This document shows, one piece after another, positions 27,027 to 63,600 of a stretch of 64,000 nt of DNA. How positions within the stretch are numbered: position 1 is the stretch's first letter; every line of letters begins with the position of its first letter. The notes under the pieces are model-generated. The model searched no databases, was not told the origin of the DNA, and saw nothing but the letters and a program-made list of their open reading frames with translations. A program made the translations under genes and the position numbers. Location of the stretch: positions 248,001 to 312,000 of IMG/VR virus record IMGVR_UViG_3300043436_004687. One strand, written 5' to 3'.

Positions 27027-28337
27027 CTAATTGTTTTCATCTTGATTATCTTCGATATTAGTAATCTCTTGCTCTTGTTCTTCAGATTCCATCAATAAGA
27101 ATTTTTTAGATTTTAATTTATATGCTTCATATTGTTCCAACCTATCGATTCTTAAAATAATCCCTTCTTCTGGAACTTTATTTTTACACATATAACAATT
27201 TTTCTCATTATAATCTTCTTCCAACTTAGATAAGAAATTCTCTCTCCAATGATTATTCAAATCTAAATGTGGGTACAAATCTTTAGCGTAACCATAATAC
27301 ATAAGGGTGTCTTTAAATAATAAACCCACTTTTTCACAAAATTCTTCAATTTGTTTTGTAGATAGGAAAATAACTTTACCATCTTCATTCACAACTGATA
27401 TTTTGTAAACGTAAAATTTGTGTTCTCCTGGTGAACAACCATAATCAAATTTTCCTTGTATAGGGCTTCCAGATGGTGTAAACCCAAGTATTTCACCATA
27501 TAATGTAAAACCTTTAGGGATTAAATGCCCAACCTCTTTAGCCACTACACCCCAAACATCCTCACCGTAAAAACCCTCGCCTTGAGTTGGATTTAAATAA
27601 CCATTTTTAATTACTTTTCTTGATGAATATACAATATCGAATTTAGTTTCATCTAATTTAACTTTAAATTTCTTCAATATTTTTTCAAACCAAGTTAATT
27701 CTCTTTTAACTTTAACATTTCCAATAACAATTGAGGTTCCATGTTTTTTATAAGAAATTTCAATTAAATCATTTGGATTTAATTTGTGGATTTCCTTTCT
27801 TAAATTTGAAGTATCGTTATGTAAATAGAATTGATTATCAACTAATCTACTAATTTTAACTGATTGTTGCCCCTTATTTTTAGAACTAGATTCTTTAATA
27901 GGTACAATATACTTTTCACAAATACTAATATTATCAATATCCGTAAATTGATCCCCCACTTTTAAAGAAGTAACATTAGTTACCAATGAAAATAAACTAT
28001 CTAAAGGCATTAGCATACCATTAGATATAACACCTCTTAATTTTAAAGCTTTTACACGCTTTTGTCTAAATGAAATAAAACCTTTTTTCTCAACATCTAA
28101 ATTTTCTTCTGGTTTATCATATAAATTATTATTTTTACAATAATCGGCTGATAATTTAGTTCCAGCAACAAAATATAACATAATAGAACCCACTTCAGTA
28201 GTTTTTGGTACTACAACATTATTCCCATCGACCACAACCCTACAAATTGCATCAGCGTTTTCAATATCAAATTTTTCTTTAATTTCAACTACTGAACAAG
28301 CATAGTTAGTTGATGATTCTTTAATAGTTAATTTCAT
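27027..28337 (-). CDS. ATP-dependent RNA ligase with an N-terminal OB/tRNA-binding-like domain
   Basis: Motif I KKHGTS, III YGEILG, IIIa FYVYKI, IV EEGIILR, V YKLKS; N-terminal VKALKLRGVISNGML. Confidence 0.85.
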   Translation of the reverse strand: MKLTIKESSTNYACSVVEIKEKFDIENADAICRVVVDGNNVVVPKTTEVGSIMLYFVAGTKLSADYCKNNNLYDKPEENLDVEKKGFISFRQKRVKALKLRGVISNGMLMPLDSLFSLVTNVTSLKVGDQFTDIDNISICEKYIVPIKESSSKNKGQQSVKISRLVDNQFYLHNDTSNLRKEIHKLNPNDLIEISYKKHGTSIVIGNVKVKRELTWFEKILKKFKVKLDETKFDIVYSSRKVIKNGYLNPTQGEGFYGEDVWGVVAKEVGHLIPKGFTLYGEILGFTPSGSPIQGKFDYGCSPGEHKFYVYKISVVNEDGKVIFLSTKQIEEFCEKVGLLFKDTLMYYGYAKDLYPHLDLNNHWRENFLSKLEEDYNEKNCYMCKNKVPEEGIILRIDRLEQYEAYKLKSKKFLLMESEEQEQEITNIEDNQDENN

Positions 28338-45634: not shown

Positions 45635-46057
45635 TTATTTATCTTTTACAATTTCAATTAATTTTTTAATACAAGCCAATTCAGCTTCTTTATACTGCTT
45701 GTTATTAAAGGTATCTAAACCATCAATACAATGAGGGTAATATACATCAGAAACAAAGGTATTACTTTCATCTAATTGTTTAATACTAATCTTTAGTAAG
45801 TAAGGCTCCTTATAAGAATCCAAATCAATTTCACTATATAGATTATACTTATCCCTAAACCATTTAAATGCTTGTTGATACAAAGGGGCAGTTATTGGTC
45901 TAGTAGGTAGAGTGTTAAAAACACTTGTATTTGTATGAGTGTTACTAAAGTTAATCAAATCTTTATATTCTTCAGTATAACCTTTAAAACAAGGTTCATC
46001 AAAACCCAACTCTTTCATCACCAACGCTTCTTCGTAAGGTATAAATTGTTCATTCAT
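45635..46057 (-). CDS. Paralogue-family member (likely start MNEQF at 46057)
   Basis: FIPYEEALVMKELGF...APLYQQAFKWFR...KEAELACIKKLIEIVK. Confidence 0.8.
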   Translation of the reverse strand: MNEQFIPYEEALVMKELGFDEPCFKGYTEEYKDLINFSNTHTNTSVFNTLPTRPITAPLYQQAFKWFRDKYNLYSEIDLDSYKEPYLLKISIKQLDESNTFVSDVYYPHCIDGLDTFNNKQYKEAELACIKKLIEIVKDK

Positions 46058-46109
46058 AATTGTATAATTTAAATTATTTTCTACAAAGATACAATATAAT
46101 ATTTTAATA

Positions 46110-46395
46110 CACAAATTTTTCCCAAAAAATTTTTAATAGATCCCCATATAGAAACAACAACAAGAAATTAGAGGGTGCCTAATATTTAAAAGCAAAAAAT
46201 TCCCCAAAAAATTTTAAGGGGAATCCATATGTAAACAATAAGGGGGAAAATTGCCAGGAAAGAAATATATTTTATAAGAACAAAATTTACCAAAAAATTT
46301 TTGAACATCAATCTGATTGCCCATATAGCATAGCGTACGGGAGGGGTAGTAAGAAAGGTTACGGGAGGGAGGTCTGACGTACAGGGAGGGGTATG
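46110..46395. repeat. Non-coding repeat block: three imperfect aaatt..ccaaaaaatttt...ccatat units followed by three AC(A)GGGAGGG units
   Basis: Units start near 46113, 46197 and 46283; G-rich units at 46337, 46361 and 46381. Confidence 0.7.
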
Positions 46396-46450
46396 TATTA
46401 GTTATAACTAATAATGTGGTTGTTTTAAAAAGTTTGTTATATTTATTAAT

Positions 46451-47077
46451 ATGAGAAACGAAAAATTAAAAGGTGCTAAAGAAAAATTAAAAAGACGTGG
46501 TATAGATAATTACAATAAGTATTTTTTTAATAATTATGAATCTATTCACTATATAGTTGATTGTTTAGATAATAATATCGAAATTAATATTAATAAATGT
46601 GATACTATATTTAACATCAGTGAATTTAATATGATTAAAATTTATGAATTGATTAGTTATTATCCTAAAAAGTTAAAAGAAATTAAAATCATAACAGACA
46701 ATGTAATTAATGAATTATATTCTATATATGGTACTACAATTGATATAATGAATTGTAAAAAAAATAATACTAATGTTAGAGGTAAATTATTTAATTCAGC
46801 TAATGTTAGAATAAAAGAATTAAAAAGAGAAACCAATATTACAAGTGAAGATATTATTTTAGTTAACAAATGTCCTTATTTAGATATTGAACTTTGTTAT
46901 ACTAATACAATAGCTTCTTATAATTCACCATCATTGGACAGAATTGATAATTCAAAGGGTTATTTAAAAGATAACATTCAAGTAATTTCTTTTTTAGCTA
47001 ATACAATGAAAGCAAGTGCAAGTAAAGAACAGCTTTTAAAATTTTCAAAGAACGTAATTAAAATGTATGATAAATAG
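46451..47077 (+). CDS. HNH-like endonuclease
   Basis: CPYL...SPSLDRIDNSKGYLKDNIQVISFLANTMK. Confidence 0.75.
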   Translation: MRNEKLKGAKEKLKRRGIDNYNKYFFNNYESIHYIVDCLDNNIEININKCDTIFNISEFNMIKIYELISYYPKKLKEIKIITDNVINELYSIYGTTIDIMNCKKNNTNVRGKLFNSANVRIKELKRETNITSEDIILVNKCPYLDIELCYTNTIASYNSPSLDRIDNSKGYLKDNIQVISFLANTMKASASKEQLLKFSKNVIKMYDK

Positions 47078-47108
47078 CTCGTTTAAGCCATTATCTTAAT
47101 AGATCCAT

Positions 47109-47219
47109 CTATGAGTTCCACGCAATATAATATAGTGCGGTAAATACGATAAAAACAATTGCGTATAGTTGTCCTACTGATGCTTGTCTTTTAGTTTGAT
47201 TAAATTCAGAATTTTTCAT
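47109..47219 (-). CDS. 36-aa membrane peptide, missing from the ORF track
   Basis: MKNSEFNQTKRQASVGQLYAIVFIVFTALYYIAWNS, with a TATATTTG promoter upstream. Confidence 0.55.
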   Translation of the reverse strand: MKNSEFNQTKRQASVGQLYAIVFIVFTALYYIAWNS

Positions 47220-47278
47220 TGTTATATATTTTAATGTTAATGCAAATATAGTAATTAAATTTGATGTATGCAAATTTA

Positions 47279-47446
47279 TTATGTTAAAATTTGCATTCCC
47301 ACCTCAACAAAATGACTTATTGGTGTTCTAACTAATCTATCCTTATCATCGTCCCACCGAATAAATAAATCATTATTTTCAATTTTTTCTATTGTGCCAA
47401 ATAATATATTATCTAAATGCACTCTATCGTTTACTTTATATTCCAT
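47279..47446 (-). CDS. 55-aa SH3-like hypothetical protein, missing from the ORF track
   Basis: MEYKVNDRVHLDNILFGTIEKIENNDLFIRWDDDKDRLVRTPISHFVEVGMQILT; its start overlaps the upstream stop codon. Confidence 0.6.
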   Translation of the reverse strand: MEYKVNDRVHLDNILFGTIEKIENNDLFIRWDDDKDRLVRTPISHFVEVGMQILT

Positions 47447-47940
47447 TACTCTATTAATAATTTGTTATTGTTTAGGAATATGTTAACTTCTTTGAATGTT
47501 TGTGCTACCTTTGTAAATTGTTCAATTTGGTTTTCTGTTAATTCTTGAGTTCTATCGAAAAAACCTGCTCCGTGACCATTTCTAGTTAACCAAAAATCAT
47601 GTCCCATTTGTGATGCTTCTAATGATGTAATGTCGTTAACTTGTGTTAAGAATGATTCACAATCGTTTTTAGCTTGTTTAAGGTTTGAATTTTCAAATAT
47701 GCTATCTACATTGTCAAGGTCTTCATTTGTCCATTGTGCGCATTCTAAATAACCATTAACCATATCATTAAGATATTGTTGATAAAGCAAATAATTTCTA
47801 TTTGTCTCATATTGGTCTTTATCGATTAGTTGACTTAATGATAATCTATTGTTATATAGAAAGGTTTCTTTTATAGAATTTTCTTTATTTTCTAGGAAGT
47901 CTAATACTGCTAATGATACGTTTTCTCTATTGATTTTCAT
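47446..47940 (-). CDS. Conserved phage hypothetical protein (HDFWLTRNGHG family)
   Basis: YLECAQWT...GHDFWLTRNGHGAGFFDR motif. Confidence 0.7.
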   Translation of the reverse strand: MKINRENVSLAVLDFLENKENSIKETFLYNNRLSLSQLIDKDQYETNRNYLLYQQYLNDMVNGYLECAQWTNEDLDNVDSIFENSNLKQAKNDCESFLTQVNDITSLEASQMGHDFWLTRNGHGAGFFDRTQELTENQIEQFTKVAQTFKEVNIFLNNNKLLIE

Positions 47941-48383
47941 TTTGAATTGTGTTATTTGATTAATACACTACAAAGATATGAATTTATATCTTATAAAACA
48001 AACTTATTATGTTAAAGTTTTGAGTTATAATATTCAATAAATTTTTCAAGGGTTTTAAAATAACCTAATACAAACCCTTCGTCTTCGGACTCTTCAAAAC
48101 CATCAAATTTGGGTGCATCTAATTCGGGAGCGCACATTTGATAACGTTCCATAATTTGGGTTAATAAGCTTGTTTCTCTCGAAATTAAAGCGCCTATTTC
48201 CTTACGATTAAATATAATTGATTGGTAGTATTCTCGACCTCTGCCAGTCGAATTTGGTTCACTAAAAGTAATTTGATTTGTGTTTGTGATTCTCATAATG
48301 TTTGTTGATTAATACATAGCAAAGATATAACTTTATATTTAGATATACAAATAAAAAGTGAATTATTTTCAAATATGCGTTAT

Positions 48384-48460
48384 AAAAAAATATAAGGTAG
48401 GTTGGAGTCTACTCTTCCACCTTGTTAGGGTACGCCCTTTGGGAGTTTTGCTCTACCAAC
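48384..48460 (-). ncRNA. Small RNA family, copy A
   Basis: TACCTTTG (48465-72) then GTTGGTAGAGCAAAACTCCCAAAGGGCGTACCCTAACAAGGTGGAAGA-GTAGACTCC-AACCTACCTTATA-T7. Confidence 0.7.
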
Positions 48461-48480
48461 ACTACAAAGGTATGAATAAA

Positions 48481-48596
48481 GATCCATATATGCAAATAAA
48501 AAGTGTTAAATTTTTACAAATAAAAAACCCTATTCACTCTGAAGTTTGGAATAGGGTTTTTAAAAACAAATGTTAGTATTAATCAGATAAAACATT
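48481..48596. repeat. 116-bp perfect direct repeat, copy 1 (copy 2 at 50892-51007)
   Basis: Base-by-base identity from gatccatatatgc to gataaaacatt; includes a terminator hairpin and the -33 region of the sRNA promoter. Confidence 0.9.
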
Positions 48597-50810
48597 TTTC
48601 TTTTTAGGGTTCAATAAACTATCTATAAATTTATTGAATGTATTTCTTTTGTAGGGTTTGTAATTTATTTCGGTATTGAATAAGGCTTTAAATTTATTCA
48701 ATTGGTACTGAATACCCGATTTTTGCAATTTGATAGGATTTTCTTTTTTCAATCTATTTTTGAATGAAATTGAAAATCTTTTTAGGTCGTAATAGCTAGG
48801 AATTATTTGAATGTTTAAAATTCTCAAGCTATATAATTTATAATCGTTTCTAAATGATTTCATATATTAATAATTGTATGAATTAATAAATTTTACACAA
48901 GCGTTATAAGTCGCATTTATTTTTGATTCATTAAAAGAAAATGAACCACTTTGTATAAATAATTCTCTTTCGTCATTTGGTTCAATTACACAACTATAAT
49001 TTTCTATGTTAACACTATATCCTAAACTTTCAATCTTTTCAACTACTTTCATTAACCAATTCCAGTCAGTATGATATTTAGAATATTTTGCAATACCTTG
49101 AATTACTTTCTCAATATCGTTTTCTCTTATTGAGAAAAAAGGCATATCTGAAAAACTATAAACTCCATCTAATTCACATTTAGGTTTTAAACCAACAAAT
49201 TCGTTTATAATTCTATTATTTTCTTCAATAGTTGGAACAATGTTTAAACTTTCCTTTGCTCTTTCAAGGGTGTTAAAATCTCCGCTTTCAAAGTTTTCCC
49301 CATTTTCAAAGATTCGTGTAAAGAATTTTTTACCTTCTTTAACTACTTGCATATTGTTTTTTTCAAAAACTACTTCTTGTGTGTTCATAATGTTTTTTTG
49401 TTATCTTGATTAATACACTACAAAGATATAACTTTATTTTTTAATATGCAAATTTATTTATTAAAAAATTGTATAATACAACCATTTTGATTAATATTGT
49501 AATTTTGGTTTAATATGGTTGTGTTATTGCTTTTGATTAGTATTGAATTCGTACTAGGTGTATTGTTAGTTATTTTTACTTCAAAATAACCTCTTTTTAA
49601 TAAGGAAACATTTATATTCCTTTGAGTTGTTTTCAATAGTGTATCGGGTGTAATTCCGTTATAATCAATTAAGATTAAACTGCTATTGGTTGCACCTTGC
49701 CAATTGATTTGGTTTTGTGTAAATTCGGCTTTCGGTGGTTCGTTTTTAATGTTAACATTTTCGTTATCAGCTGTACAACTTGCCAATAGAAAGATTAACG
49801 AAAATGCAACTAATTTCATTATCGACAAAGTAAAGAATAATTTTTTCATAATATGTATTTTTAATGGTTAATACCTCAACAAAGATATAAATTAATATTT
49901 TAATATGCAAACTATTTTAGATAATTTTTTTCATAAATATCAAATTGTCCTACAATTGATAATAAGCCGTTTTCATCATTTAAAGTATCTTTGGTAATGA
50001 TTTTACCATCCTTTGATTGATATTGAGTCAAAACGCCTTTAAATTGCTTTATATAATCTATTTCGTTTTCAAATAACCATAAATCATATTCGGGGTTTGT
50101 TGGGTGTTGTAATTCGGTTTTAAATCTATATCCGTGTTGAGTATATTTAACCTCAACAATTAGAGTAGATTTTCCGTTGTATTGTGGATAATGACAATTT
50201 TTAATAACTACCCTTTCATTTTTATAATCGTATGGTGTCATATTATTTTGTTATTGGGGTGTAAATGTTGCTATTCATTGCAATTCTGTGAGTTTCTTGT
50301 GTTGCGTGGTCAAAAAATTGTAAGTAACCATTATGTTTATTACTTAACAATTGACAATTTTTATAGGTTGTTGGTGGAAAACCATAACTAGGGTTTATAT
50401 CTTGTGTTACATCAGCAAAATAGGGCATGAATTTATTGTTAACATCAATTGCATCCTTTGGTGGGTTGCTTGAATATTCCCACAATCTTGATTGAAATGC
50501 TAATTTGCCATTAGTATCAAAAAATTTACCATCCTTTTCAAATATGTTTGGCATTGGTTCTTTTGTATATAATACTTGACCAATTAAATCGAATTTTACT
50601 ATTTTGAATACCATAATTATATTTGAATTAAGGTTAAAACTATTAATGATAAGAATGTAAGCAAAGCAATGTTTACTTTAGTTTGAATTTCTTTTGATGC
50701 TTTTTTAGTTGTTGCCATCGTTATAATAATGTTTGTTGATTAATACACTACAAAGATATAAAATAATATTTACTTATCCTAATAAAATGTGTTAAAATTT
50801 TCAACCTTAT

Positions 50811-50871
50811 AAAAAAAATATAAGGTTGGTTGGAGTCTACGTCTCAACTTTTCTCGTTTGCTTTGTATTAC
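50811..50871 (-). ncRNA. Small RNA family, copy B
   Basis: TACCTTTA (50876-83) then GTAATACAAAGCAAACGAGAAAAGTTGAGAC-GTAGACTCC-AACCAACCTTATA-T8. Confidence 0.65.
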
Positions 50872-51011
50872 TATGTAAAGGTACAACAAAGGATCCATAT
50901 ATGCAAATAAAAAGTGTTAAATTTTTACAAATAAAAAACCCTATTCACTCTGAAGTTTGGAATAGGGTTTTTAAAAACAAATGTTAGTATTAATCAGATA
51001 AAACATTCGAT

Positions 51012-51368
51012 TTTAAAAATAGGGAATAGTTTTCTCACCCTATTATGATTGAAACTTTAATATCATCCGACAATGGCGCACATATTGGCAAATCGGAATT
51101 AAATCAATCTTTGACAAAACCACCTATCTAGTTTTTATCTTCTCTTTGAGCCGTGTGAAATCAGTTAATATAAAACGGCATTTGATAGGAATTTAAAATA
51201 AACCATTGTGTTAAGTTGCGTACACTACTACTTGCAATATTAATAAGATTTTAAACACTTGTAATCCTAGTCTTCTTTATGGTTTATTATTTTTTAAAAT
51301 GAAAGGTAAGTCTTGATGTCTTACGTTAATTCGTTTTATGATGGCTTGCTTACAACCCTCTCATTTCT
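51012..51368 (-). ncRNA. Candidate ~355-nt structured non-coding RNA of unrecognised class
   Basis: Own TACCTTTG promoter (51373-80) and terminator (51015-44); I found no sizeable ORF on the transcribed strand; four nested-helix domains identified by eye. Confidence 0.7.
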
Positions 51369-52610
51369 TTTACAAAGGTAATTCTTTTATTTTAAACTAC
51401 CAAATATTTTTTGTTAAATTTTCAATAAAGTTTTACATTCTAAACCAAATGAATTGTTTATAAAAACCTCTTTCATTTGATATTTTCTACCATTCTTTAA
51501 TTGGAATTTATCCAATGCGTCTTGACTTTTAAATTCTTTTATGAATGTCATATTAAATAAATTTTCGTATGTTGTCAGCCTCTTTTTTATATTCAGAAGT
51601 TTTGATTTTATATTCTGAACATACGTCTTCTAAAATTGTCAAAGCCAACAAAGAATTATGTTTTAAGAATTCGCTATCTGAACCAATAGCACCGCTATTT
51701 AAAGCACGTTCTAATTTCTTGAATGCGTTTTCTTCAATATCTTTTAACATTTGTTTTACTCTTACTTTGGAGTATCTTAATGCAGTTTTTTTAGTATTGT
51801 CCATAATGTATTTTGATTAATATTTCTTTAGCAAAGATATGAATTAATATTTAAACTACCAAATAAAAAATGTTAAAGTTTTCTATAATCAAAATTAATA
51901 AGGGAATTGCCTCTTGCTCTCTTTTGAATCATTGGTAAAAATCCAGCACTAAAATAAGGATATTGCCTTTCTAATTCTTTGAATTTTTTTGTACGTCTAT
52001 CTAACTTTTCAATTACAATATGTACCTTTAATTCAAAATAATCAAATATGTTAACATTCAAATCAGCAATTTCCTGGCTTTCAAACATTGTACTATTGCA
52101 TTGTCTATTGGTAAGATTTTCTTTTGCGTTAAGCATAATAAATGTATCTCTACCTATCTGAACTAAACTAAATACTTTTTTCATTTTGTTTTTATTTATT
52201 TGATTAATACACTACAAAGATATGAATTTATATTTTAATATCCTAACAAATTATGATAAACTTTTAGCGCAAAAGCTTTCTTTTACATCTTCAAAGTTTC
52301 TTTCAATTAATTCTATAGTTACATTTAAAATATAACGTTCATCCGTTTCTTTGTTTCCACATCTTAACCAAGTTGAAACATTTTCAGCATCAATCGCAAC
52401 TATAAATAAATCCCAATTAATACCACTACTAAATGTAATTTGTAATCTATATTTATGTGCTTTTTTCATTTTGTTTTTTATTATCTTGATTAATACACTA
52501 CAAAGATATGAATTAATATCTTATAAAACAAATAAATTATCATTTATTTTTATTTGAAATTTTAACACTTTTTATTTGGTGGTTTAAAATATATTTTGTA
52601 CCTTTGTTAT

Positions 52611-52690
52611 GTTGAAAGATACAAACAAAGAAAGTAATGAAAATTATTGATACGTAGACTCCGTCACACCCATATATGAAATATTTTTTT
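52611..52690 (+). ncRNA. Small RNA family, copy C (divergent 3' end)
   Basis: TACCTTTG (52599-606); AGTAAT-GAAA-ATTATT hairpin; GTAGACTCC at 52654; terminator 52699-730. Confidence 0.6.
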
Positions 52691-54193
52691 AAAAGCATAA
52701 AAAATCCGTATTATAATAATACGGATTTTTAAATATAATTTAGTATGTAAAATTTCTCGTTCTACCTAAAAGAGTATAACGGCTTTTATCGCCTAAATAA
52801 GTCAATTGTACATTAACAACCATTCTTACAATATCCTCAAAACTTCCACTAGTAAAAGAAACATCTTTCAAACTACCAATTGAAAATTTAACCTTGATAG
52901 TTAACACTTCGCAATATTCGGTTTTAGTTGCTTTGATTGTATATTTTACATTCAATTCTTTTAAATAGTCTTTAACGTTTCCATTGTACTGAAGTGTTTT
53001 ACTTCCCATATTCCACCAATGGATTAATAAATTTGACTTTAAAATTCTTTCTATTTCTCTTTTGTTGTATGGTTCCATAATATTTTTATGTTATTTGATT
53101 AATACACTACAAAGATATAAAATAATATTTACATACGCAAATAAAAATGCAAAAAAAAATCCATTATTTTCATAATGGATTTTTAGACGTTTTAAGCAAC
53201 GTTATTAGATTTAATGACTACTAACTCTAAATGGTTGGAAATCTTTAACCTCAAAGCTTTTAATTGCATCCACATCCAATTTAACTTCATTGAATAAATT
53301 CAATGTTGGATTGTTTGCACCCTCAACCATTTTTTTAACGCTTGCATCATACAAAGGAATCAAGTCTTCAACCTTAGCACCGCAATAGATAACATTTGCT
53401 TTCATATCTAGCTTAGACATTGCAATATATGTAACATACAAATATTTAATTTCATCTTGACTAAACAAATCGAAATTTTCAGCTAAAAAATCACTTGCTC
53501 GGTTTAATTCTTTTGCACCATTCAAAGAAAATGCAGTAGTTTTAATATGATTGTTTTCATCATAGAATCTAACTAAAAATTGAGAATAGGTAGATTTTTT
53601 AGGTTTGTTTTTTAATCCAGTTTTTGGATTGATAGTTTGCGTTACGTGACGATAACCCTTCTTTTTATCGAATTCAATTGAATCAAACAAAGTAGTTCTA
53701 GCTGTGTAACCATAAGGATAATTTTCTACTTCTACTACTTCTGATGTTGGGATAAATTTTCTCATTTTGTTTTATGTTATTTGATTAATACACTACAAAG
53801 ATATAAATTAATATTTACTTATGCAAATTTATTTTGAATTAATTTTGATATTTGAATGAATAAAATAATTGTTATTATCTTTCAATCTCAATTTTCTCAA
53901 TTTCATAATACAAATATTTGGAATATCTGAAATGTGGATAATTTTATAATGATTGTTATTAATTCGTTTTAATAATAAAGTAGGGTTTGGATTAAATATT
54001 TCATTAATTGAATTGAAAGAACCATTTGGAATACCTACAAAAATATGTGAATTTTTAAATTTTCTCATTTGAATTATGTTCTTGATTAATACACTACAAA
54101 GATATAAAATAAAATGTTACAATCCTAATAAAAAAATGAATTATTTTTTATTTAAAATTTGTGTATATGGATTTTTATTTGTACCTTTGTAGT

Positions 54194-54272
54194 GTTGGTA
54201 GTGAAAACTGAAACGGGTTACTAATCAAAAATTAGTCAGAGGGTGGACTCCGACCTACCTTATATTTTTTTT
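54194..54272 (+). ncRNA. Small RNA family, copy D
   Basis: TACCTTTG (54182-89); AGT-GAAA-ACT and ACTAAT-CAAAA-ATTAGT hairpins; GTGGACTCC-GACCTACCTTATA-T8; terminator 54290-322. Confidence 0.7.
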
Positions 54273-55611
54273 AAAAAAAACTGAAGACAAAAAAACCATA
54301 TAAATTTCTTATATGGTTTTTTAATTTATTATTTTCGATCTCTATTTTATTAAGTATATATTATTTATAGTTACCTATTCGGGTGGTGCTTTATTTCTAT
54401 CCATCTTTAAATTATTAATCAGCGTTCAAAACTTCTAAATTGTAACCAATGTTTTCTAATTCGTTAAACAAATCTTTGTATTGTTCTTTGGTTGCATCCT
54501 TGCAATTGTTTTTGATAAAATCAGAATGACAAATTGAGTGTTGCCCTAAATTAGCATAACAATCAAATCCATTATCTTTATTTGGCATTTCTGGGAATAC
54601 TGCCAAAACCTCGCTAAATGGTTGTTCATCCAATTCACTTGGTGTATATGTAGCAATGTAAAATTGTACTTTGGTAATTTCTGTATCTTTTTTCATTTTG
54701 TTTTTATTTATTTGATTAATACACTACAAAGATATGAATTTATATTTTAATATCCTAATAAAATATCAATTATTTTCTAAAACCATTTAAAAGTTCATCT
54801 AGTAAAATATAACCTACTCCGATAAATGGTAAACCGCTATTTGGTTCGTAGTTATAATTGTATTGTAGTCTAATTTGCAATTCATTATTTTTATCTAATA
54901 AGAAATTTTGAAATCTACTAAATCCAGTAATTGATTTTTTAAGAATTTCGTTTACTTCTTTATCAGCTTTTTTTTCTTCATCTGTAAAATCACTTCTTTT
55001 TATTCCTTCATAACCTTTATTTTGAAGTGTTAATGATGGAAAATTTTTATAAATTTCTAATAAAGTTGAATGTTGCTCCTTAGTTAATAAATTGATTTTC
55101 ATAATGATTTTATTTATCTTGATTAATACACTACAAAGATATAAATTAATATTTAGATATACAAATTTATTTTACTTTATTTTCACTATATAATTTTTTC
55201 GCTTTATATTGATAACTACCAAAAGAAACAATATGTTTTTCTACTAAATTATGAATAGTTGCATTATTACTTTCACAAGCTTTTGACAACCTACCTATAA
55301 AAACCTTATAAGTTAAAGCACCATTATTAAAATCCTCAATTGATTTTCTTGCTTTCCAATAGTTTTGATTTTCAGTAGTTCCGTGATTTTCATTTGGAAA
55401 AAATCTACTAGTTACTTCCGTAGCCACCTTATTGAAAAAATCTTCTGTTGTATGTATCATAATATTTTATTTATCTTGATTAATATGATACAAAGATATA
55501 AAATAATATTTTAATATTCTAATAAAATATGTTAAAATTTAATCATAAAATATTTTAAAAATAATTGTATTTTTATTTGGTAGTTTAAAATAATTGTCGT
55601 ACCTTTGTAGT

Positions 55612-55691
55612 GTTGGTGGTGATAACCGAAACAGGCTCCTACAATTCTTTTGCGGGCGGAGGGTGGACTCCGACCTACCTTATATTTTTTT
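55612..55691 (+). ncRNA. Small RNA family, copy E
   Basis: TACCTTTG (55600-07); GGT-GATA-ACC hairpin; GTGGACTCC-GACCTACCTTATA-T7; terminator 55709-739. Confidence 0.7.
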
Positions 55692-57516
55692 AAAAAAAAA
55701 GATATAAAAAAATTCCATATATTAACTATATGGAATTTTCAAAACCAAACCAAAACCTATTTAACCAATCTTAAAAAATCATCCAATTTACTACCACATC
55801 TTAAAGTAATTTTTTCGTAAACATGACCATTGTCCCCAATCTCAAAAAAGTATTCAACGTCTTCAGTTCTCAAGCTACCCTTTTTACCACCTTTAACGCT
55901 ATTGTGAACCTCTAAACCAGTGTTTTGTATTCTAGTTAAAAACGCATTTGTTTTTTCATCAATTTCGTTTTGTTCAATGTTTTTTAAAACCTCAACCGCT
56001 TGCAAATAACTTAACCAATCATCCATTTTTTTAATGGTTGGTTTACCTACTTTGTTAGGCATAACTAAATCGTGCTTTATATCAGTTTTTGAACCATTAA
56101 GTAAAGAAAACTCGAAACTAGTTTCGTTGTAACGCTTAAATGGTCTTAACAAAATACCTTTAAACTCAACATATACATCAATAATATCGTGGTAATTTTT
56201 TATTTGTTCAATATCATTTTTAACATCTAAATAAGGAATAATTTTTACAATCCCTTCAAAGTGTTTTAAACTATCTAATTTTTCTTTTAAATATTTTTCA
56301 CTATATTCAGTTAAAATGTAACCTTCTTTTTTTGCTTGCTCTAATGTAATTTGATTTTTCATAATTAAATAATGTTTGTTGATTAATACATAGCAAAGAT
56401 ATAAATTAATATTTACATATACAAATAAAATATGTTAAAATTTCAAATTAATCTATACCCCAACCACATTCGTCATACTCATTACTATTTTTGCAAATAT
56501 AACAAGCAATTACATTAATAATTTCATTTAAAAATAACATAGCATTTTCTTCTAATTCTGTCAAATTTCTAATATCAGTTATATGCTCAACTTCAATTTG
56601 ATAATCTAAACATTGTAATTGTTTAAATAAATTAATTGGACTCAATTTAAAAATAGGAGTTTTTTCAAAAACTTGTAAATTTTCCTTTGCAATTTCAGCA
56701 TCTAAAACACCCTCGTAATGATGCTTATATTGAAGTGTAACTGCCAATACATTAATTTTTCTTAACTCATCAACAATCAAATCAATTTCATTTTGCCAAT
56801 CATTTTTTTTGTTGACAATGTTTTCAAATTTTTCTTTCAATTCATAAGGCAAATAAAAATTAGATTTTGAAATTAATACTTTCAATGATTCAGCAATTGA
56901 ATTAAAATGTTTCGGACTGCAAATGTAACTAGACATAATATTTTATTTTTATTGATTAATACCTTACAAAGATATAAAATAATATCTTAATAAACAAACT
57001 TTAAATGTTAAATTTTTGAAATTTCACTTGGACTTAATCTAACATCTTTTTTACAATCAGTAGTACCATATACAAACGAACCTCTTTTCATTGGATATGG
57101 TGGAAATGATTTAATAACAAATTCAGTACCCATTGCAATTTTTTCTTTATAGTCAAAACTCTCTACTAAAGTTTTACATCTATCTCCAACTTTAAAACCT
57201 TTATAACTTAACATAATTTAATCGTTTAAATGTTCAAATACATCGTTGGTACTCATTCCCATAGTACGAGGAAAATTAATATATTGTAAGTCATTATTTT
57301 CATCAATATAACTAAATATATCGTTAACCTCATTACTTCTCACAAATTGAATATTACTTGCTTTCATTTTTTTATCTTTATTGATTAATACACTACAAAG
57401 ATATAAATAAAATTCCATATAAACAAATAAATTAATATCTTTTTTACAATAAAAATAATTTGAAATTTTAACACTTTTTATTTGTATATTCAAAAAACAA
57501 TTTGTACCTTTGTAGT

Positions 57517-57591
57517 GTTGGTAGAGAATATCCCAAAAGAAAGTAATGAAAATTATTGATACGTAGACTCCAACCTACCTTATATTTTTTT
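57517..57591 (+). ncRNA. Small RNA family, copy F
   Basis: TACCTTTG (57505-12); 5' part like copy A, middle identical to copy C; GTAGACTCC-AACCTACCTTATA-T7; terminator 57606-634. Confidence 0.7.
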
Positions 57592-58068
57592 ATAAAGATA
57601 TAAAAAAATATTCCATACATTATATGGAATATTTAAAAACATATTAATTAATATATTAATTCTTTTATAAATTTAAAATCCTTATCAAATTTAACTAACT
57701 TTTCTTTATTGGTTAAACTATTGATAATACCACAATCTAAAGTATAAGAGTTTTTATTTTTGTAAACTCTTGCCTTATGTAAAAATATCTTTGTTTTAGA
57801 TAATAAACTATCTAAAGCATAATATCTATTTTTTTCTAAATAGATATGAACATAACCCAATTTTTGCAATCCCTCTTTACTATTATTAGCTTGTACCAAA
57901 ATAGTGTTTTCTAAATTTGTGAAATACATAATATTTTACTTTATCGATTAATACACTACAAAGATATAAAATAATATCTTATAAAACAAATAAAAATCAA
58001 TAAAAAATAAATTAAAAATAATTGCATTTTTATTTGCATATCTAAAATTTTATTCGTACCTTTGTTAT

Positions 58069-58130
58069 ATACAAAGCAAGGGAGCAAACCTGAGAAGTAG
58101 ACTCCACCCTACAATAAACTCAACTTATTT
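58069..58130 (+). ncRNA. Small RNA family, copy G
   Basis: TACCTTTG (58057-64); ATACAAAGCAAGGGAGCAAACCTGAGAA-GTAGACTCC; colinear with copy B; no clear U-tract. Confidence 0.6.
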
Positions 58131-58306
58131 ATAACAAGTCTAAATTATAAAAATTTAACAAAATAAATTTGCATATCTAAAAAACAATTCATACCTTTGC
58201 ATTTGACTGAATAGTGTACACTCACCCAAAAATGTAGTGTACACCCAACTCATACAACCATATCACAAAAGTACCCTCTAATGCGGTACAACACAACTAT
58301 GAAGTA

Positions 58307-58618
58307 ATGCCAAACATAAAAAAACTAAAAGAAGCATACAACAAAGCAAGCCAATCAAAAATTGGTGATAAAACAATATGCCCTTCTTGTAACAACTCAT
58401 TCGAGAAAAAAACATATAACCAAATATTCTGTAAAGCAAAACCAAATACAACTTGTAAAGACTATTACTGGAATAACATAACACCCAATAAAAGAAATAA
58501 CAAAACTAGAATATCACCAGCTTCCAAAAGATTCATGGCTAATAATATATTATATAATATATTTAACCCCGATGACTATGAACACCCCTTCAGCTCCGAT
58601 GCTCTAGGACAAGACTAA
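58307..58618 (+). CDS. Cys-rich (zinc-finger-like) hypothetical protein
   Basis: CPSC...FC...C pattern; preceded by a TACCTTTG promoter near 58192 and a ~105-nt leader. Confidence 0.65.
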   Translation: MPNIKKLKEAYNKASQSKIGDKTICPSCNNSFEKKTYNQIFCKAKPNTTCKDYYWNNITPNKRNNKTRISPASKRFMANNILYNIFNPDDYEHPFSSDALGQD

Positions 58619-58772
58619 AATTATATTTCATAGCAATCATGTAAGGTTAAAACTGACTATGCGTATATGAAACATAATATATAAAATATCCCCAAGTACA
58701 CATTTGTGTTTATAAAATTTAATGTATTGTGTACTTTATAATTTTTCACTCTATTTATAATAAAAGATTATT

Positions 58773-59282
58773 ATGGGTAGAAATATGGAAGTTAGAAAAA
58801 AATATTTAGAAGCTAATAAAGAAAAAATAAAAGAACAAAAGAAAATTCGTTATGAAGCTAATAAAGAAAAAATAAAAGAATATCAAAAAAATTATCGTAT
58901 AAATAATAAAGAAAAAATAAATAATTATTATAAACGAAAAAGAAGTGAGGATGAATTGTATAAATTAAAAGGAAATACAAGAAATTTAGTCAAAAATTCA
59001 CTTAAAGGTTTTTTTAAAAACATATATAGAACAGAAGAAATCTTAGGTTGTACACTAGAAGATTTTAAATTACACTTAGAATCAAAATTCGAATCATGGA
59101 TGAATTGGGGTAATTATGGTATCTGTAATGGTGAATTAAATTATGGATGGGATATTGACCATGTTATACCAATATCGAGTGCTAAAACATTAGATGACGT
59201 ATATCGTTTAAATCATTATACTAACCTACAACCATTATGTAGTTATACTAATAGATATATAAAAAGGGATAGCTACACATAA
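58773..59282 (+). CDS. HNH-type endonuclease, paralogue of 2849-3553
   Basis: EANKEKIKE repeats, then ILGCTLEDFKLHLESKFESWMNW...WDIDHVIPISSAKT...NLQPLCSYTNR. Confidence 0.8.
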   Translation: MGRNMEVRKKYLEANKEKIKEQKKIRYEANKEKIKEYQKNYRINNKEKINNYYKRKRSEDELYKLKGNTRNLVKNSLKGFFKNIYRTEEILGCTLEDFKLHLESKFESWMNWGNYGICNGELNYGWDIDHVIPISSAKTLDDVYRLNHYTNLQPLCSYTNRYIKRDSYT

Positions 59283-59987
59283 CAAAAAATTAATCCTACC
59301 CTCATACTTGAGAATAGCATTATAATACCCTTATATACCATCGATCCAAATCAATGGACACAAAAGTGTACCTGTAAAAAATAACTAATATCCAAATTTA
59401 AAATGTTAAAATTTTCATAAAATATCCGAAGCAATCAGATTTTTAGATAGATTAAGTTAGATTTAAGATAGTTTTAGATAGATTAGAATATAATCATATT
59501 ATCTTTTATTGTATGTTTATATGGTATATTCTATATCATTTCACTTTGTAATTCAAAGTACTTTATAGTTCAAATTTCTTTGTAGAATTTAGTGGAGTTC
59601 TTATATACGTTACTTTTGCGTATATTTTGTATTATGTTGCTTCTATATTCTATTAGTCTTATGCTTATATTTTATGGTATCTTATCCATAATTTACCACA
59701 TATTACCACTTGATTTTAAAGCGTGAACATGAAATATTTATTAGAATGTATAAAAATATGGGTTAATTATGGGGTTTTACATCAATTTTTGTATAAAATT
59801 GATTATACCAAGAATGGGTATTGCATGAATAAATGTTGTATAGGATATTATACAATTTCTATAATTACATTCTTCACTATCCTTTCCATCGAATATCCAG
59901 TTTACCATTTCTTTTAGAAAGAAGATTGATATAAGGGGTATATAGAAATACCATTTGCTATCTAGGAATGCTTTTTTCATATATGAT

Positions 59988-60669
59988 TTATTTTAGGTTT
60001 TGTTTTATGTATTGGTTGAATTCTATTTCATCTAGGTTACTGGATTTTCTACCTATATGAGAATTAAAATCTAGGAGTAGGTTTATTGCTTCTTTTCTAT
60101 TCCAATTATCTTTTGGGTTTGGAATAGGGAATGATGTAGTTTTTATATTGATAGTATTATCTTTTGGATTTACTTTCAATTGGGTTGGTTCATCTTCATA
60201 GACTTTGAAAAGAACATCTGTTTTTATTTCATATTCTACATATACCTTTGTGATTATGTTCAAAGTAATGTTCAAGGAATTCTTTTGATGGTTTTGGTAA
60301 AGATTTGTAACCGCTTGTATCACATGATTTGCATTGATTGAATCCATCTTTATCGTGTGAGCCTTGTCCATTGCAAGAAATACAAATTGATTTTAGGGAT
60401 TCATCATTTGATGCTATAATCTTTTTATTTAATCTATCTTTTATTGGTATATGATTACCGCTTGCAAGATATTTCATATTTTCTATAAAGCAATCACCTC
60501 TTTGTATTTCATCATTTGTTATGATGGATATGCTTTGTAGTATGAGAGAAGCGTTCCAATCTTCTTTGGTTGCATTTAAATCCTTTACAAACTTTAATTG
60601 GTTTTTATTTGAGTCCAATATAATTTGCTCTTTTATTTCGTGAGCATGATTCCAGTCTTTTAATATCAT
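59988..60669 (-). pseudogene. Gene apparently split by a frameshift near 60250 (listed as the two overlapping ORFs 60229-60717 and 59988-60371)
   Basis: The upstream frame carries IITNDEIQRG...KKIIASNDESL...PKPSKEFLEHY; a protein-like continuation NIITKVYVEYE...LKVNPKDNTINIK...WNRKEA lies in the other frame. Confidence 0.55.
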
Positions 60670-60673
60670 AGTT

Positions 60674-63600
60674 TTAAATTTTTTGACAATAAACGCATTT
60701 TGCGGTTTCTCTACCATACATAGTTTTCATTGAGCAAGTTCCATAATGAGTTCTTAAATCTGAAAACTTAATTTCTGTGTAACCTAATGTAACTAAATGG
60801 TTTTCTAAATCCACTTCATTATTAGCTACCAACCTTAAATCTTCACCAAAATCATTTTCTAAATGTAATACTAATAAATTCATAATTTAATCAATTTAAG
60901 TTTTCCTATAATTCCAGTTGCAATAAATGTAGATGTCTCACCTTTTAAAATTATTGAGCCAACACCATTTGTAAATTTATCGACCAATTCAATATCTTCA
61001 ATTATTCCTTTATAACCTTTGTAAGCATCTGCACCATCACGTCTTGGGCAAGTTAATATTTCAACCTCATCACCCTTTTTAAAATTCGATAAGTGTAATT
61101 TTGATAAAAAATTAAACATAATAGTTTTTTTTATTGATTAATAACATTACAAAGATATAAAATAATATTTACATACGCAAATAAAAAACATATTTTTTTA
61201 AAATGTTTCAAGCCAACGATAAGAAGCTTGTTTAAGAATGTTTATTTGTACCATCAATAGATTAGAAGATACATCCATTTGAGTTAATTTTGCAGTTTCT
61301 CTACATAATTTGCGAACCATTGAATTATCTGGGAAAATACCAGTTTTTTCAGCTTCTTTAATTTCTCGAACACTTAACTTGATTTCATCATCAGATAAAT
61401 CAGCATATAATTTACTTATTTCATTCATTATCTTATTTTTTTGTTGAATTGTACTTCCATTTAATTTTATTAATAAATGATTCATTTTCACATAATTCAT
61501 CAAGATTTGAAAAAAGTTTATTTTGATTTGAATTAATGTAAAAACTTATACCCGAAACCCCTTTATTTTTCGTATAATGTCTTCCATCGCTAAAATAAAC
61601 AACTTCGCCTAAAATTTTATATTCAAATGTTATATCGGGGAAATTTCTGTTTTCTTCTCCTTTTATATCTACTCTAATAAGTCTAGGGTTAGAATATTCA
61701 GTAGCAACTATTCCCATTTTATTGAGACATTCATTTAACTTTATTAAATCATCTGAAATCAATTTTTTTAAGTTATCATTAACAAACCTATTATTTATTT
61801 CAATCTCTTTAATTGCTTTATCAATATCAAATGCTTCTATATCGAACGCTTCTTTAGATAACAATTTAAATGGTTTTTGTTCTGCATTGTTTAAATTGAT
61901 AAACTCATTTTCAAGATTAGCTAAAATTTGAATTTGTGTTGGTGTTAAATTTATGTTTATCATAATCTTATTTTTATTGATTAATAATTTTCTTCTACAA
62001 AGATATAAAATAATATATTATAAACCTAATTATTTTTGATTTAATTTTTCAATTAATTTCTCAATTGAAATTGGTTCTTTATAATACCTTAAATTTTTCA
62101 TTGATTTAAGACGCTCTGTTACCCTTTCCCTAACAATTTGAATATCTTGTTGGGTTGGTGTATAATCATTCATTAAATGACTTGGAATGTCGTTGAAAGC
62201 ATCTGAATAGTCAGTTGGATTGAAACCTCGTTTGATACATTCTTGTGTTAATGCTTCGTAGTGTTTTTTTAAAAAACCGCATTTATTCATCAAAGAAAGT
62301 TCATGCCCCTTATTGAGTGTGAATTTATCAATTGGTTTACTTTTGTATTTCCCCGATTTTATTTTGTTTGGGATTCTTAATACCTCAATTCTTTCTCTGT
62401 TAAGATGTTTATCACATAATTCATGTGAAAACCCTACTGAAACTCTAGTCATATCTTAAAGTGATATGAATTTAACCGCATCGGGTTGTAAAGAAAATTC
62501 TTTTAAAATATAAGTTTCTATCTCAAGTTTTGTGAAATTTGGAACATCATCACCCTTATAAAGATAAGTATTTATAACGTTATTTGGTTCATTGTTTTCT
62601 ATTCTATATACAAATAAACTTCTAGTGTTTTCTTCACCCAATATTGGTTTTAAAACGTAATATAATTTTAACATATCTTTATGTTTTAATGATTAATAAT
62701 TTTCTTCTACAAAGATATAAAATAATATTTTAATATGCAAATAAAAAAGACATTTTTTTTAATATTTTATTTAGGAGTCATTTCAACCTTATTTCTATCC
62801 CCCAAATTAAATTTGGTGACTGGAAAGAGCGTCTTTTAAATAAAATATTAGTCTAATAATTTTTTCACTAATTCATAAGATAATGAAAAACTTTTAGGTG
62901 TTACATCAAATCGTCCATTTAATTTTAAAATATGAATAGTATCATAAGTCATATCACATACTGCAATTTCTTCAGTATGTTTACCCTCTTTGAAATCCAC
63001 TTGTAATTGCCTTACTTCATATTCATTCAAAATATATTCACCAACTTTAAATTTAGGAACTGGAATTCTCGTGATATTCATATCTTTATATTTTTTTAAA
63101 TGTTTCACATTCTTTTGCTATAACAAATGCTTTAAAATCGGAACCCCATCCACTTTTAGGTTGGGTTTTCAAAGCATTTATAAATTCTGTATTATGAAAT
63201 CCCAAAGGGATACAATTACCTTTATATACTGCATTTAAGTTATCACTATATTTACCCTCTGAATTACCACAATCACATTTTTTTATGATGTTGGGTGATA
63301 ATGAGAAAACAGATAAACAATCATTACAAAATAATAGTTTCATTAGAAATCGTAAGTTACTACTTGAACATCACTTAATGTTATTTCAAGATTATTAACA
63401 AAGTAAATTTTTTTACCGCTTGATTTAAAAAACGCTTCTTTAAACTCATTTAAAGCTATTAATTTAATCTCCAAAGTTTCATTATCAGTTTGATGTCTAA
63501 ACCATTCCATAAAAGGAGTTGCATACATTTTTATCATATTAATATGTTTTAAACGTTATACAATAATCAATAGCTTCTTGTTCATCGTCAGTAAACAATA

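What the first reader, a model, noticed from the sequence alone, without database searches (positions are those of the whole stretch)
51012..51368. Unrecognised ~355-nt highly structured RNA with its own promoter and terminator
Seen in sequence (minus strand): a TACCTTTG promoter at 51373-80, a terminator hairpin at 51015-44 and no sizeable ORF found between them. Pairing covers almost the whole length. Domain 1: AAATGAGAGG/CCTTTCATTT (plus coordinates 51357-66 with 51297-306) enclosing two hairpins. Domain 2: ATAAACCAT/ATGGTTTAT (51279-87 with 51198-206) enclosing a TAGGATT/AATCTTA hairpin whose loop GTGTT can pair with a downstream AACAC (possible pseudoknot), plus a TTGC/GCAA hairpin. Domain 3: CCTATC/GATAGG (51184-89 with 51123-28) enclosing GCCGT/ACGGC. 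Domain 4: nested GATTGA/TCAATC, TTTAA/TTAAA, TCCGA/TCGGA and CAAT/ATTG. It occupies a slot in the early cassette array where a protein gene would normally sit. Inference: a large phage ncRNA of undescribed class, possibly a scaffold, decoy or ribozyme.
Basis: partly seen in the sequence, partly recalled or inferred. Interest (0 to 1): 0.85.

Follow-up and report, generated by a model that had tools for sequence, protein, structure and literature searches.

The report
Orphan gene-less early cassette, ordinary fold
A jumbo phage of Bacteroidota carries a real early promoter followed by about 355 bases with no gene, but this stretch folds no better than any other part of the genome and has no relative anywhere, so the claim of a new highly structured RNA is not borne out.

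Summary
The window is part of a 339.6-kb IMG/VR jumbo-phage contig. The promoter at 51373-51417 (-) is real: it belongs to a 45-nt composite family with 12 sites against 0.04 expected. The 353 nt behind it (51008-51360) have no ORF. The longest stop-free run is 29 codons, stops occur at random density, and the phage uses the standard code. The listed helices exist, but "highly structured" fails. The fold z-score is -1.06 against shuffles, which is the median of 64 equal-sized control windows from the same strand. The "terminator" is a weak 7-bp hairpin; the strong terminator lies 40-80 nt further on, inside a duplicated module. No Rfam family, tRNA, repeat or homologue was found in phage genomes, IMG/VR, metagenomes or 231 kb of related loci, so covariation cannot be tested. 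The payload lies between a duplicated promoter and a duplicated terminator-sRNA module that recombines in nature. Its GC content (30.3%, 92nd percentile) is the only hint of function. My best reading is a transcribed, untranslated orphan payload, more likely a recombination relic than a dedicated structured RNA. In passing I found a well-supported small-RNA family next door, with a covarying hairpin and an invariant 3' motif in about 14 phage contigs.

The parts
51373..51417 (-). Early promoter of the local family: TTAACA, then N6, then -33 TTTG, then N20, then -7 TACCTTTG
   Evidence: The composite pattern has 12 sites against 0.04 expected. It is a paralogue of the promoter at 51832-51876. 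The motif type matches the Bacteroidota sigma-A consensus TTTG/TAnnTTTG (PMC7366714).
51361..51372 (-). Stub of shared leader (..AAAGAAAT), the last bases still alignable to the promoter and leader of the 83-aa operon. The 5' recombination junction lies at about 51361.
   Evidence: Alignment A5.
51008..51360 (-). GC is 30.3%.
   Evidence: No paralogue in the window. Stops are at random density, 9-13 per 127 codons in each minus frame, and there is no codon-usage signal (P=0.10). Fold z is -1.06 / -0.88. GC is at the 92nd percentile of 357-nt windows.
51015..51044 (-).
   Evidence: Energy -7.1 kcal/mol, z -1.26. Not called by the terminator scan.
50726..51007 (-). Duplicated module, about 80% identical overall to 48295-48596. 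Its first ~118 nt are 100% identical, including the last 5 codons and stop of ORF 48579-48863. This is the 3' recombination junction of the payload.
   Evidence: The natural deletion variant L040 joins the two copies.
50934..50972 (-). Strong intrinsic terminator T1 (13-bp arms, then TTTTTTATTT). It is the likely 3' end of transcripts from the 51380 promoter and from the upstream 83-aa/45-aa operon.
   Evidence: -15.4 kcal/mol, z -3.95; inverted repeat I5, 100% complementary.
50814..50883 (-). Degenerate copy of the small-RNA unit: -7 box TACCTTTA at 50876-50883, ending ...GTAGACTCCAACCAACCTTATATTTTT

Best explanation
The finding is the non-coding payload of one cassette in the phage's early-gene array.

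Shown:
- A bona fide early promoter (51373-51417), itself a diverged copy of the neighbouring operon's promoter, faces 353 nt of unique sequence with no reading frame.
- That sequence ends at the boundary of a duplicated terminator/small-RNA/promoter module.

Inferred:
- The host sigma-A RNA polymerase starts at about 51366 and makes an untranslated RNA.
- A minority of transcripts may stop at the weak hairpin (about 350 nt). Most run on to the strong shared terminator T1 (about 435 nt).
- The same stretch also serves as the 3' untranslated tail of the upstream 83-aa/45-aa operon, because no terminator separates them.
- The payload is most likely a relic of the recombination that shuffles these cassettes: either a slot whose gene was lost or replaced, or a captured fragment.
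- It is carried along because its repeated flanks (promoter on one side, module on the other) are the units that recombine. It is not a dedicated, elaborately folded RNA machine.
For: - The promoter belongs to a highly non-random family and is homologous to the adjacent promoter up to AAAGAAAT, then diverges.
- The 3' boundary coincides to the base with a module duplicated from 48.5 kb, 118 nt of it 100% identical.
- The two module copies recombine in nature. Contig L040, from another sample, lacks the 2.4 kb between them and keeps the payload. Strain L004 shows further cassette-sized deletions.
- The nearest relative of the downstream gene (83% aa identity, L010) carries a different cassette with a 104-aa gene at this position.
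- The fold z-score equals the genome median.
- There is no coding signal. Stops are at random density, and TAA occurs in every frame. TAG and TGA each end 10 of 100 real ORFs, so recoding does not explain the stops.
- No Rfam family, tRNA or repeat matches.
- No homologue was found anywhere.
Against: - GC is 30.3%, higher than the coding average (26.7%) and all other non-coding gaps (17.6-27.7%), and at the 92nd percentile of windows. An old functionless relic in a 25.6% GC genome would be expected to have drifted AT-rich.
- Phages usually purge useless DNA.
- The payload is 100% identical in five other contigs that cover all of it, from at least four further samples, including the deletion variant. 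The flanks of those contigs are equally identical, so this carries little weight.
- Domains 1 and 4 taken alone fold somewhat better than shuffles (z -2.76 and -1.93).
- The same early region demonstrably encodes small RNAs behind the same TACCTTTG promoter subtype, so a non-coding gene here would not be out of place.
Confidence: 0.45

Rival explanations
1. It is a lineage-specific functional non-coding RNA of 350-440 nt, expressed early from its own promoter. It acts in trans, for example as a decoy or sponge for a host defence or RNA-binding factor, without needing an unusually stable global fold.
For: - A real promoter and an ORF-free payload.
- GC enrichment relative to all other non-coding DNA of the phage.
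- The region is accessory and anti-defence-rich, with a Gad1 homologue, a DNA methylase and an RNA ligase.
- Neighbouring units with the same TACCTTTG -7 box are small RNAs.
- The payload is retained in the L040 deletion variant.
- Sub-domains 1 and 4 have z -2.76 and -1.93.
Against: - The whole-length fold is at the genome median.
- The sequence is a singleton, with no homologue even in the 83%-identity relative or in 231 kb of related loci.
- No Rfam match at E<=10.
- The domain z-scores were computed on boundaries chosen at helix ends.
- No dedicated strong terminator.
Confidence: 0.3
2. It is a cis-acting 3' untranslated or attenuator region. The stretch modulates read-through, stability or termination of the upstream 103/83/45-aa operon before the shared terminator T1. 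The weak hairpin, an AU-rich hairpin (50968-51019) and T1 offer alternative pairings.
For: - No terminator lies between the 45-aa ORF stop (51414) and the finding.
- Three consecutive hairpins share CCCTATT/AATAGGG and A/T-run arms.
- The extended RNA down to T1 folds at z -2.19.
Against: - The internal promoter argues for independent expression.
- The z-score gain comes from T1 itself.
- The same T1 follows ORF 48579-48863 directly, with no such spacer.
- No conservation data.
Confidence: 0.12
3. It is a decayed or recoded protein gene. The minus frame that ends in ...NVLSD* (51250-50993) once encoded a protein and is now broken by TGA, TAG, TGA, TGA. Alternatively, micro-ORFs of at most 13 codons are the product.
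For: - That frame runs in phase into the duplicated last five codons of ORF 48579-48863.
- It gives the best codon-usage score in the region when stops are ignored.
- All four of its internal stops are TGA or TAG, each one transition from TGG or CAG.
Against: - The codon signal is not significant (P=0.10 against shuffles) and lies below every real gene of the window.
- Stop density equals random expectation in all six frames.
- TAG and TGA are used as true stops by 20 of 100 ORFs, including the neighbouring gene.
- The 5' half has five TAA in that frame.
- No similarity to any ORF of the window or of the relatives.
- The 29-aa and 22-aa pieces find nothing in 50,697 phage genomes.
Confidence: 0.08

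Closest known systems
Canonical intergenic sRNA units of Bacteroidota: own sigma-A promoter (TTTG / TAnnTTTG) plus intrinsic terminator, e.g. GibS of Bacteroides thetaiotaomicron (PMC7366714)
   Same: A promoter of the same consensus type. ORF-free. A hairpin with a U-run lies downstream.
   Different: It is several times longer than the ~70-80-nt sRNA units found next to it. No conservation in any relative. No transcript evidence. The adjacent hairpin is weak, and the strong terminator belongs to a duplicated module.
The small-RNA family found next door in this work (48386-48472, 54182-54269, 55600-55689, 57505-57589; about 14 IMG/VR contigs)
   Same: The same TACCTTTG -7 box subtype, the same early region, non-coding.
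   Different: The finding lacks the family's invariant GUAGACUCCAACCUACC 3' motif and its covarying hairpin. It is about five times longer and has no relatives.
Phage anti-defence RNAs: RNA anti-CRISPRs built from solitary CRISPR repeats, and ToxI-type repeat antitoxins (from my own knowledge, not checked in a paper here)
   Same: A promoter-led non-coding RNA in an accessory, anti-defence-rich part of a phage genome.
   Different: No tandem or dispersed repeat unit. No identified CRISPR-repeat match. The host's arrays are unknown, so repeat mimicry could not be tested.
Group I self-splicing introns of phages (Rfam RF00028)
   Same: Size of about 350 nt, multi-helix appearance, located between short ORFs.
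   Different: No Rfam match at E<=10. No split host gene: the upstream 45-aa ORF ends in TAA, with a promoter after it, and no downstream exon ORF exists. A promoter inside an intron would also be unusual.
Gene remnants and morons in mosaic phage early regions
   Same: It occupies a cassette slot bounded by recombining repeats. Relatives carry a different cassette there. Strain variants differ by whole-cassette deletions.
   Different: No residual reading frame or protein similarity is left, and GC is higher than expected for long-decayed DNA.

Membership tests
Any Rfam 15 family (4227 models, including group I/II introns, ribozymes, riboswitches, 6S, tmRNA, Y-RNA-like) | Score at or above the family's gathering threshold | tested here: not met
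   No hits at gathering in the whole window. At E<=10 inside 51012-51368 the only match is TYMV_upPK (14.1 bits against 38). The ncr1015 match, which only clips the finding's 3' end, scores 26.6 against 60. RefA9 (26.9 against 49) lies outside the finding on the T1 terminator.
Structured ncRNA (generic) | Folding energy significantly below composition-matched shuffles and below the genomic background | tested here: not met
   z -1.06 with 17 of 100 shuffles as good. z -0.88 is the 50th percentile of 64 control windows.
Structured ncRNA (generic) | Compensatory base changes in homologues | not testable with these tools
   No homologue found. All other copies are 100% identical.
Bacteroidota sigma-A (sigma-ABfr type) promoter / local early promoter family | -33 TTTG and -7 TAnnTTTG at family spacing, plus the local TTAACA upstream element | tested here: met
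   51373-51417 matches TTAACA-N6-TTTG-N20-TACCTTTG, one of 12 sites against 0.04 expected. Consensus as in PMC7366714.
Intrinsic (Rho-independent) terminator | Stable GC-containing hairpin with a short loop, immediately followed by a U-run | tested here: inconclusive
   The hairpin at 51015-51044 has a 7-bp stem, a 13-nt loop, -7.1 kcal/mol and z -1.26, followed by TTTTT. It was not called by the scan. The terminator at 50934-50972 meets the criterion (z -3.95).
Protein-coding gene under standard or recoded genetic code | An open frame, or a frame open once one stop codon is reassigned, with codon usage like the phage's genes | tested here: not met
   Longest open run is 29 codons. TAA occurs in every frame. 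TAG and TGA terminate 10 real ORFs each. Codon score P=0.10 and below all real genes.
Recent pseudogene of a window or relative gene | Residual translated similarity to an intact gene | tested here: not met
   tblastn of all 430 window ORFs and tblastx against 231 kb of related loci found nothing above noise. The translated pieces find nothing in phage genomes.
tRNA / tmRNA | ARAGORN cloverleaf or tmRNA model | tested here: not met
   No genes in the window.
Repeat-based anti-defence RNA (ToxI-like array, CRISPR mini-array / solitary repeat) | Tandem or spaced direct repeats, or identity to a host CRISPR repeat | tested here: inconclusive
   No tandem repeats and no meaningful direct repeats. 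Identity to host CRISPR repeats was not tested because the host is unknown.
Neighbouring phage sRNA family | Invariant 3' motif GUAGACUCC(A/G)ACCUACC preceded by a short covarying hairpin | tested here: not met
   The motif is absent from 51008-51372. The five matches in the window are all elsewhere.

The most novel reading that the evidence does not exclude
The 353-nt payload is a genuine early-expressed long non-coding RNA peculiar to this jumbo-phage lineage. Its raised GC content is maintained by selection. It acts as a decoy or sponge for a host defence or RNA-binding factor, alongside the multi-copy small-RNA family in the same region.
Probability: 0.15. Interest if true: 0.55.

Novelty: new member of a known kind. 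Interest (0 to 1): 0.2.

Why it matters
If the stretch were a functional 350-nt phage RNA, it would add to the very short list of long non-coding RNAs in phages, and to the almost unexplored RNA biology of Bacteroidota jumbo phages. As it stands, its main value is as a caution. In a 26% GC genome, any 357-nt window can be drawn as a set of nested helices, and 'pairing covers almost the whole length' carries no information without a background control. The locus is still useful for showing how the early cassette array evolves. Promoters and a terminator/sRNA module are the recombining units, and natural variants differ by whole cassettes. The conserved small-RNA family found beside it is the better candidate for follow-up.

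Tried and rejected
- **Stop-codon recoding (TAG or TGA as sense).** Rejected. Both are used as terminators by real ORFs, and every frame also has TAA.
- **Decayed paralogue of ORF 48579-48863.** That ORF sits upstream of the other module copy. Only its last 5 codons are shared, and they are part of the duplicated module. There is no further DNA or protein similarity.
- **Residual codon-usage signal.** I saw a modest peak in one frame, but it is not significant against shuffles and lies below all real genes.
- **Group I intron.** No Rfam hit and no split ORF.
- **A CRISPR-repeat-like reading of GTTTCAATC...GAGAAAAC (51039-51065).** It occurs once, has no partner repeat, and overlaps the hairpin. 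I treated it as pareidolia and did not test it against host arrays.
- **Homologue hunts that found nothing:**
  - blastn 'distant' against 50,697 phage genomes.
  - Two exact 20-21-mers in IMG/VR, which hit only the source contig.
  - Two exact 21-23-mers in JGI metagenome contigs, with 0 hits.
  - blastn, nhmmer and tblastx against loci around 123-aa-gene homologues and sRNA-bearing phages.
  - tblastn of the 29-aa and 22-aa pieces.
- **The upstream 83-aa gene.** It is itself an ORFan, so it gave no syntenic relatives.
- **Antisense targets of the neighbouring sRNAs inside the window.** The search found only further copies of the family.

Full report
**Source and setting.** The two genes that flank the finding place the window on IMGVR_UViG_3300043436_004687, a 339,635-bp viral contig. 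The window has 25.6% GC and is packed with small minus-strand ORFs. Most have no family. Exceptions include a Gad1 (Gabija anti-defence) homologue, a TnpB, an RNA ligase, a DNA methylase and an AAA ATPase. Between about 46 and 62 kb the genes come as cassettes, each behind a near-identical promoter. The promoters carry -33 TTTG and -7 TAnnTTTG, the consensus of the Bacteroidota primary sigma factor (PMC7366714). This points to a Bacteroidota host.

**Checking the observation: what holds.** TACCTTTG at 51373-51380 is the -7 box of a full 45-nt promoter, TTAACA-N6-TTTG-N20-TAnnTTTG. That composite pattern occurs 12 times in the window against 0.04 expected from shuffles, and 51373-51417 is one of the 12. 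This promoter is a close paralogue of the next one upstream (51832-51876). The two align through the first transcribed bases (AAAGAAAT) and then diverge completely.

**No reading frame follows the promoter.**
- The longest stop-free run in the three minus frames is 29 codons.
- ATG-started ORFs are at most 13 codons (read).
- Each of the six frames has 7-13 stops in 127 codons, the density expected for random sequence of this composition.
- Recoding does not rescue a frame. TAA occurs in all frames, and TAG and TGA each terminate 10 of the 100 ORFs of at least 80 aa, including the neighbouring gene.

**Checking the observation: the fold.**
- The 357-nt RNA has an MFE of -63.7 kcal/mol against -58.9 +/- 4.6 for dinucleotide-preserving shuffles (z -1.06; 17 of 100 shuffles as good).
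- I computed the same statistic for 64 other 357-nt windows spaced along the same strand. Their z-scores have mean -0.76, sd 1.22 and median -0.88. The finding (z -0.88 in that run) sits at the 50th percentile.
- The opposite strand gives z -0.52.
- Cut at their own closing helices, which favours low values, the four domains give z -2.76, -1.41, -1.26 and -1.93.

**The 'terminator'.** The hairpin at 51015-51044 has a 7-bp stem and a 13-nt loop (-7.1 kcal/mol, z -1.26), and the scan did not call it. A much stronger terminator (13-bp arms, -15.4 kcal/mol, z -3.95, then TTTTTTATTT) lies at 50934-50972. With it included, the 439-nt RNA folds at z -2.19, but the gain comes from the terminator itself.

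**Known families.** No Rfam family reaches its threshold anywhere in the window. At E<=10, the matches that touch the finding are TYMV_upPK (14.1 bits against a gathering score of 38) and ncr1015 (26.6 against 60), which only clips its 3' end. RefA9 (26.9 against 49) lies on the T1 terminator outside it. ARAGORN finds no tRNA or tmRNA. There are no tandem repeats and no meaningful dispersed repeats.

**Relatives.** None of the homologue searches found a divergent relative.
- The stretch 51008-51360 has no paralogue in the window at DNA or translated level.
- It has no match in 50,697 phage genomes.
- Two exact words from it occur in IMG/VR only on the source contig. Two words have no match in the JGI metagenome collection.
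- The downstream 123-aa gene has 68 homologues. Its closest one (83% aa, contig L010) shares the promoter, a conserved 33-aa membrane micro-ORF and the gene. Upstream of that promoter, however, it has an unrelated cassette with a 104-aa gene.
- The upstream 83-aa gene is an ORFan.
- blastn, nhmmer and tblastx against 231 kb of loci from related phages give nothing.
- tblastn of the two longest pieces of the best frame gives nothing.
- Five other contigs cover the whole payload and are 100% identical across it and its flanks: L003, L004, L005, L040 and L041. L042 stops at 51059, inside the payload.

Covariation therefore cannot be tested in either direction.

**Anatomy of the locus.** The payload is bounded by two recombination junctions.
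- On the 5' side is the duplicated promoter and leader stub.
- On the 3' side, exactly at 51007, begins a 282-nt module that is about 80% identical to 48295-48596. Its first ~118 nt are 100% identical.
- The module contains, in order: the last five codons and stop of ORF 48579-48863 (at the 48.5-kb copy), terminator T1, a TACCTTT(G/A) promoter, a short non-coding unit, a T-run, and the next mRNA promoter.

The two copies recombine in nature. Contig L040, from sample 3300043466, goes from the 45-aa gene through the intact payload straight into the 48.5-kb copy and lacks the 2.4 kb between. Strain L004 has two further cassette-scale deletions. No terminator separates the upstream 45-aa ORF (stop at 51414) from the payload, so the payload is also the 3' tail of that operon.

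**The one feature that argues for function is composition.** The payload has 30.3% GC, against 26.7% for coding sequence and 17.6-27.7% for the other ORF-free gaps. It ranks at the 92nd percentile of 357-nt windows. When stops are ignored, there is a small codon-usage peak in the frame that runs into the duplicated NVLSD* codons. The peak is not significant (P = 0.10 against shuffles) and lies below every real gene.

**Interpretation.** The best-supported picture is a transcribed, untranslated orphan payload in a recombining cassette array.
- Most likely (0.45): a relic or captured fragment without a dedicated structure.
- Second (0.30): a lineage-specific functional ncRNA that does not depend on an exceptional global fold.
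- Also possible (0.12): a cis-acting 3' region of the upstream operon.
- Least likely (0.08): a decayed or hidden coding sequence.

What is shown: the promoter, the lack of a frame, the ordinary folding energy, the junctions, the singleton status and the natural deletion variant. What is inferred: the transcription start, the transcript ends and the lack of function.

**Noticed next door: a small-RNA family.** The short unit inside the duplicated module belongs to a family with five recognisable copies in the window (48386-48472 -, 50814-50883 -, 54182-54269 +, 55600-55689 +, 57505-57589 +) and further partial ones (52599-52662 +, 58057-58112 +).
- Each copy lies behind a TACCTTTG-type promoter and ends ...GUAGACUCC(A/G)ACCUACCUUAUAU(U)n.
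- The exact 22-mer occurs in 19 stretches of about 14 different IMG/VR contigs of 12-339 kb, always about 40-65 nt downstream of a TAnnTTTG box.
- A 19-nt core of that 22-mer occurs only once in 185,579 bacterial and archaeal genomes, on a Lentimicrobium MAG contig.
- Across 26 distinct sequences, the motif is preceded by a short hairpin whose arms differ in sequence but stay complementary (22 distinct arm pairs, e.g. CGTGC/GCACG, CTGAC/GTCGG, TCGCT/AGTGA, CGATACT/GGTATCG). A 5' GGG and a 3' AGAG flank the hairpin.
- No Rfam family matches, and no paper in the library holds the motif.

This family has the promoter, the conservation and the covariation that the finding itself lacks. It deserves its own evaluation.

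Noticed in passing
window 48386-48472(-), 50814-50883(-), 54182-54269(+), 55600-55689(+), 57505-57589(+); partial copies 52599-52662(+), 58057-58112(+); loci L017-L036: A conserved phage small-RNA family of about 60-85 nt. It has its own TACCTTTG-type promoter, a variable 5' part, a short hairpin with covarying arms (22 distinct arm pairs in 26 sequences), and an invariant 3' motif GUAGACUCC(A/G)ACCUACCUUAUA followed by a U-run. The exact 22-mer is in 19 stretches of about 14 IMG/VR contigs. A 19-nt core of it is in only one of 185,579 bacterial genomes (a Lentimicrobium MAG contig). No Rfam match and no literature match. Function unknown.
   Followed up: partly
window 50726-51007 and 48295-48596; locus L040: A 282-nt terminator/sRNA/promoter module is duplicated, with its first ~118 nt 100% identical. 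Contig L040 from another sample is a natural deletion variant that joins the two copies and lacks the 2.4 kb (six genes) between them.
   Followed up: yes
window 46000-62800, e.g. 50751-50795, 51832-51876, 56394-56438: Early promoters form a 45-nt composite family, TTAACA-N5-9-TT(T/A)G-N19-21-TAnnTTTG, with 12 exact sites against 0.04 expected. The mRNA promoters are followed by a conserved leader, TAGTGTATTAATCAA. The TTAACA element with a TAAAAT-like box 17 nt downstream also resembles a sigma-70 promoter.
   Followed up: partly
window 14817-15935 (-): A TnpB-type protein (HTH_OrfB_IS605, OrfB_IS605 and Cas12f1-like TNB domains, E 4e-26) is encoded in the phage. Its expected guide (omega) RNA at the 3' end was not looked for.
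   Followed up: no
window 24836-25960 (-): A strong Gad1 (Gabija anti-defence 1) homologue (Pfam PF25705, E 4e-75). An RNA ligase (27027-28337) and a DNA methylase (20006-20818) lie nearby. This part of the genome looks like an anti-defence and accessory region.
   Followed up: no
window 50617-50718 (-); L010 767-868: A 33-aa hydrophobic micro-ORF (MATTKKASKEIQTKVNIALLTFLSLIVLTLIQI) directly upstream of the 123-aa gene is conserved in the 83%-identity relative. It is probably a real small membrane protein.
   Followed up: partly
window 50243-50614 (-): The 123-aa protein of unknown function has 68 homologues (39-83% identity), with no Pfam domain. They sit on contigs up to 538 kb, always within arrays of small genes, so this is a widespread jumbo-phage early protein family.
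   Followed up: partly
locus L004 versus window 49511-49708 and 47780-48295: A strain variant from another sample is identical over 3.9 kb including the finding. It then has a 196-nt deletion inside the 131-aa gene, 11 substitutions in 1.2 kb, and a second deletion that removes the 94-aa gene 48012-48296.
   Followed up: partly
window about 57344-57700 (-): This window had the lowest fold z-score (-4.36) of the 64 control windows. It covers the sRNA copy at 57505-57589 and its flanking terminators.
   Followed up: no
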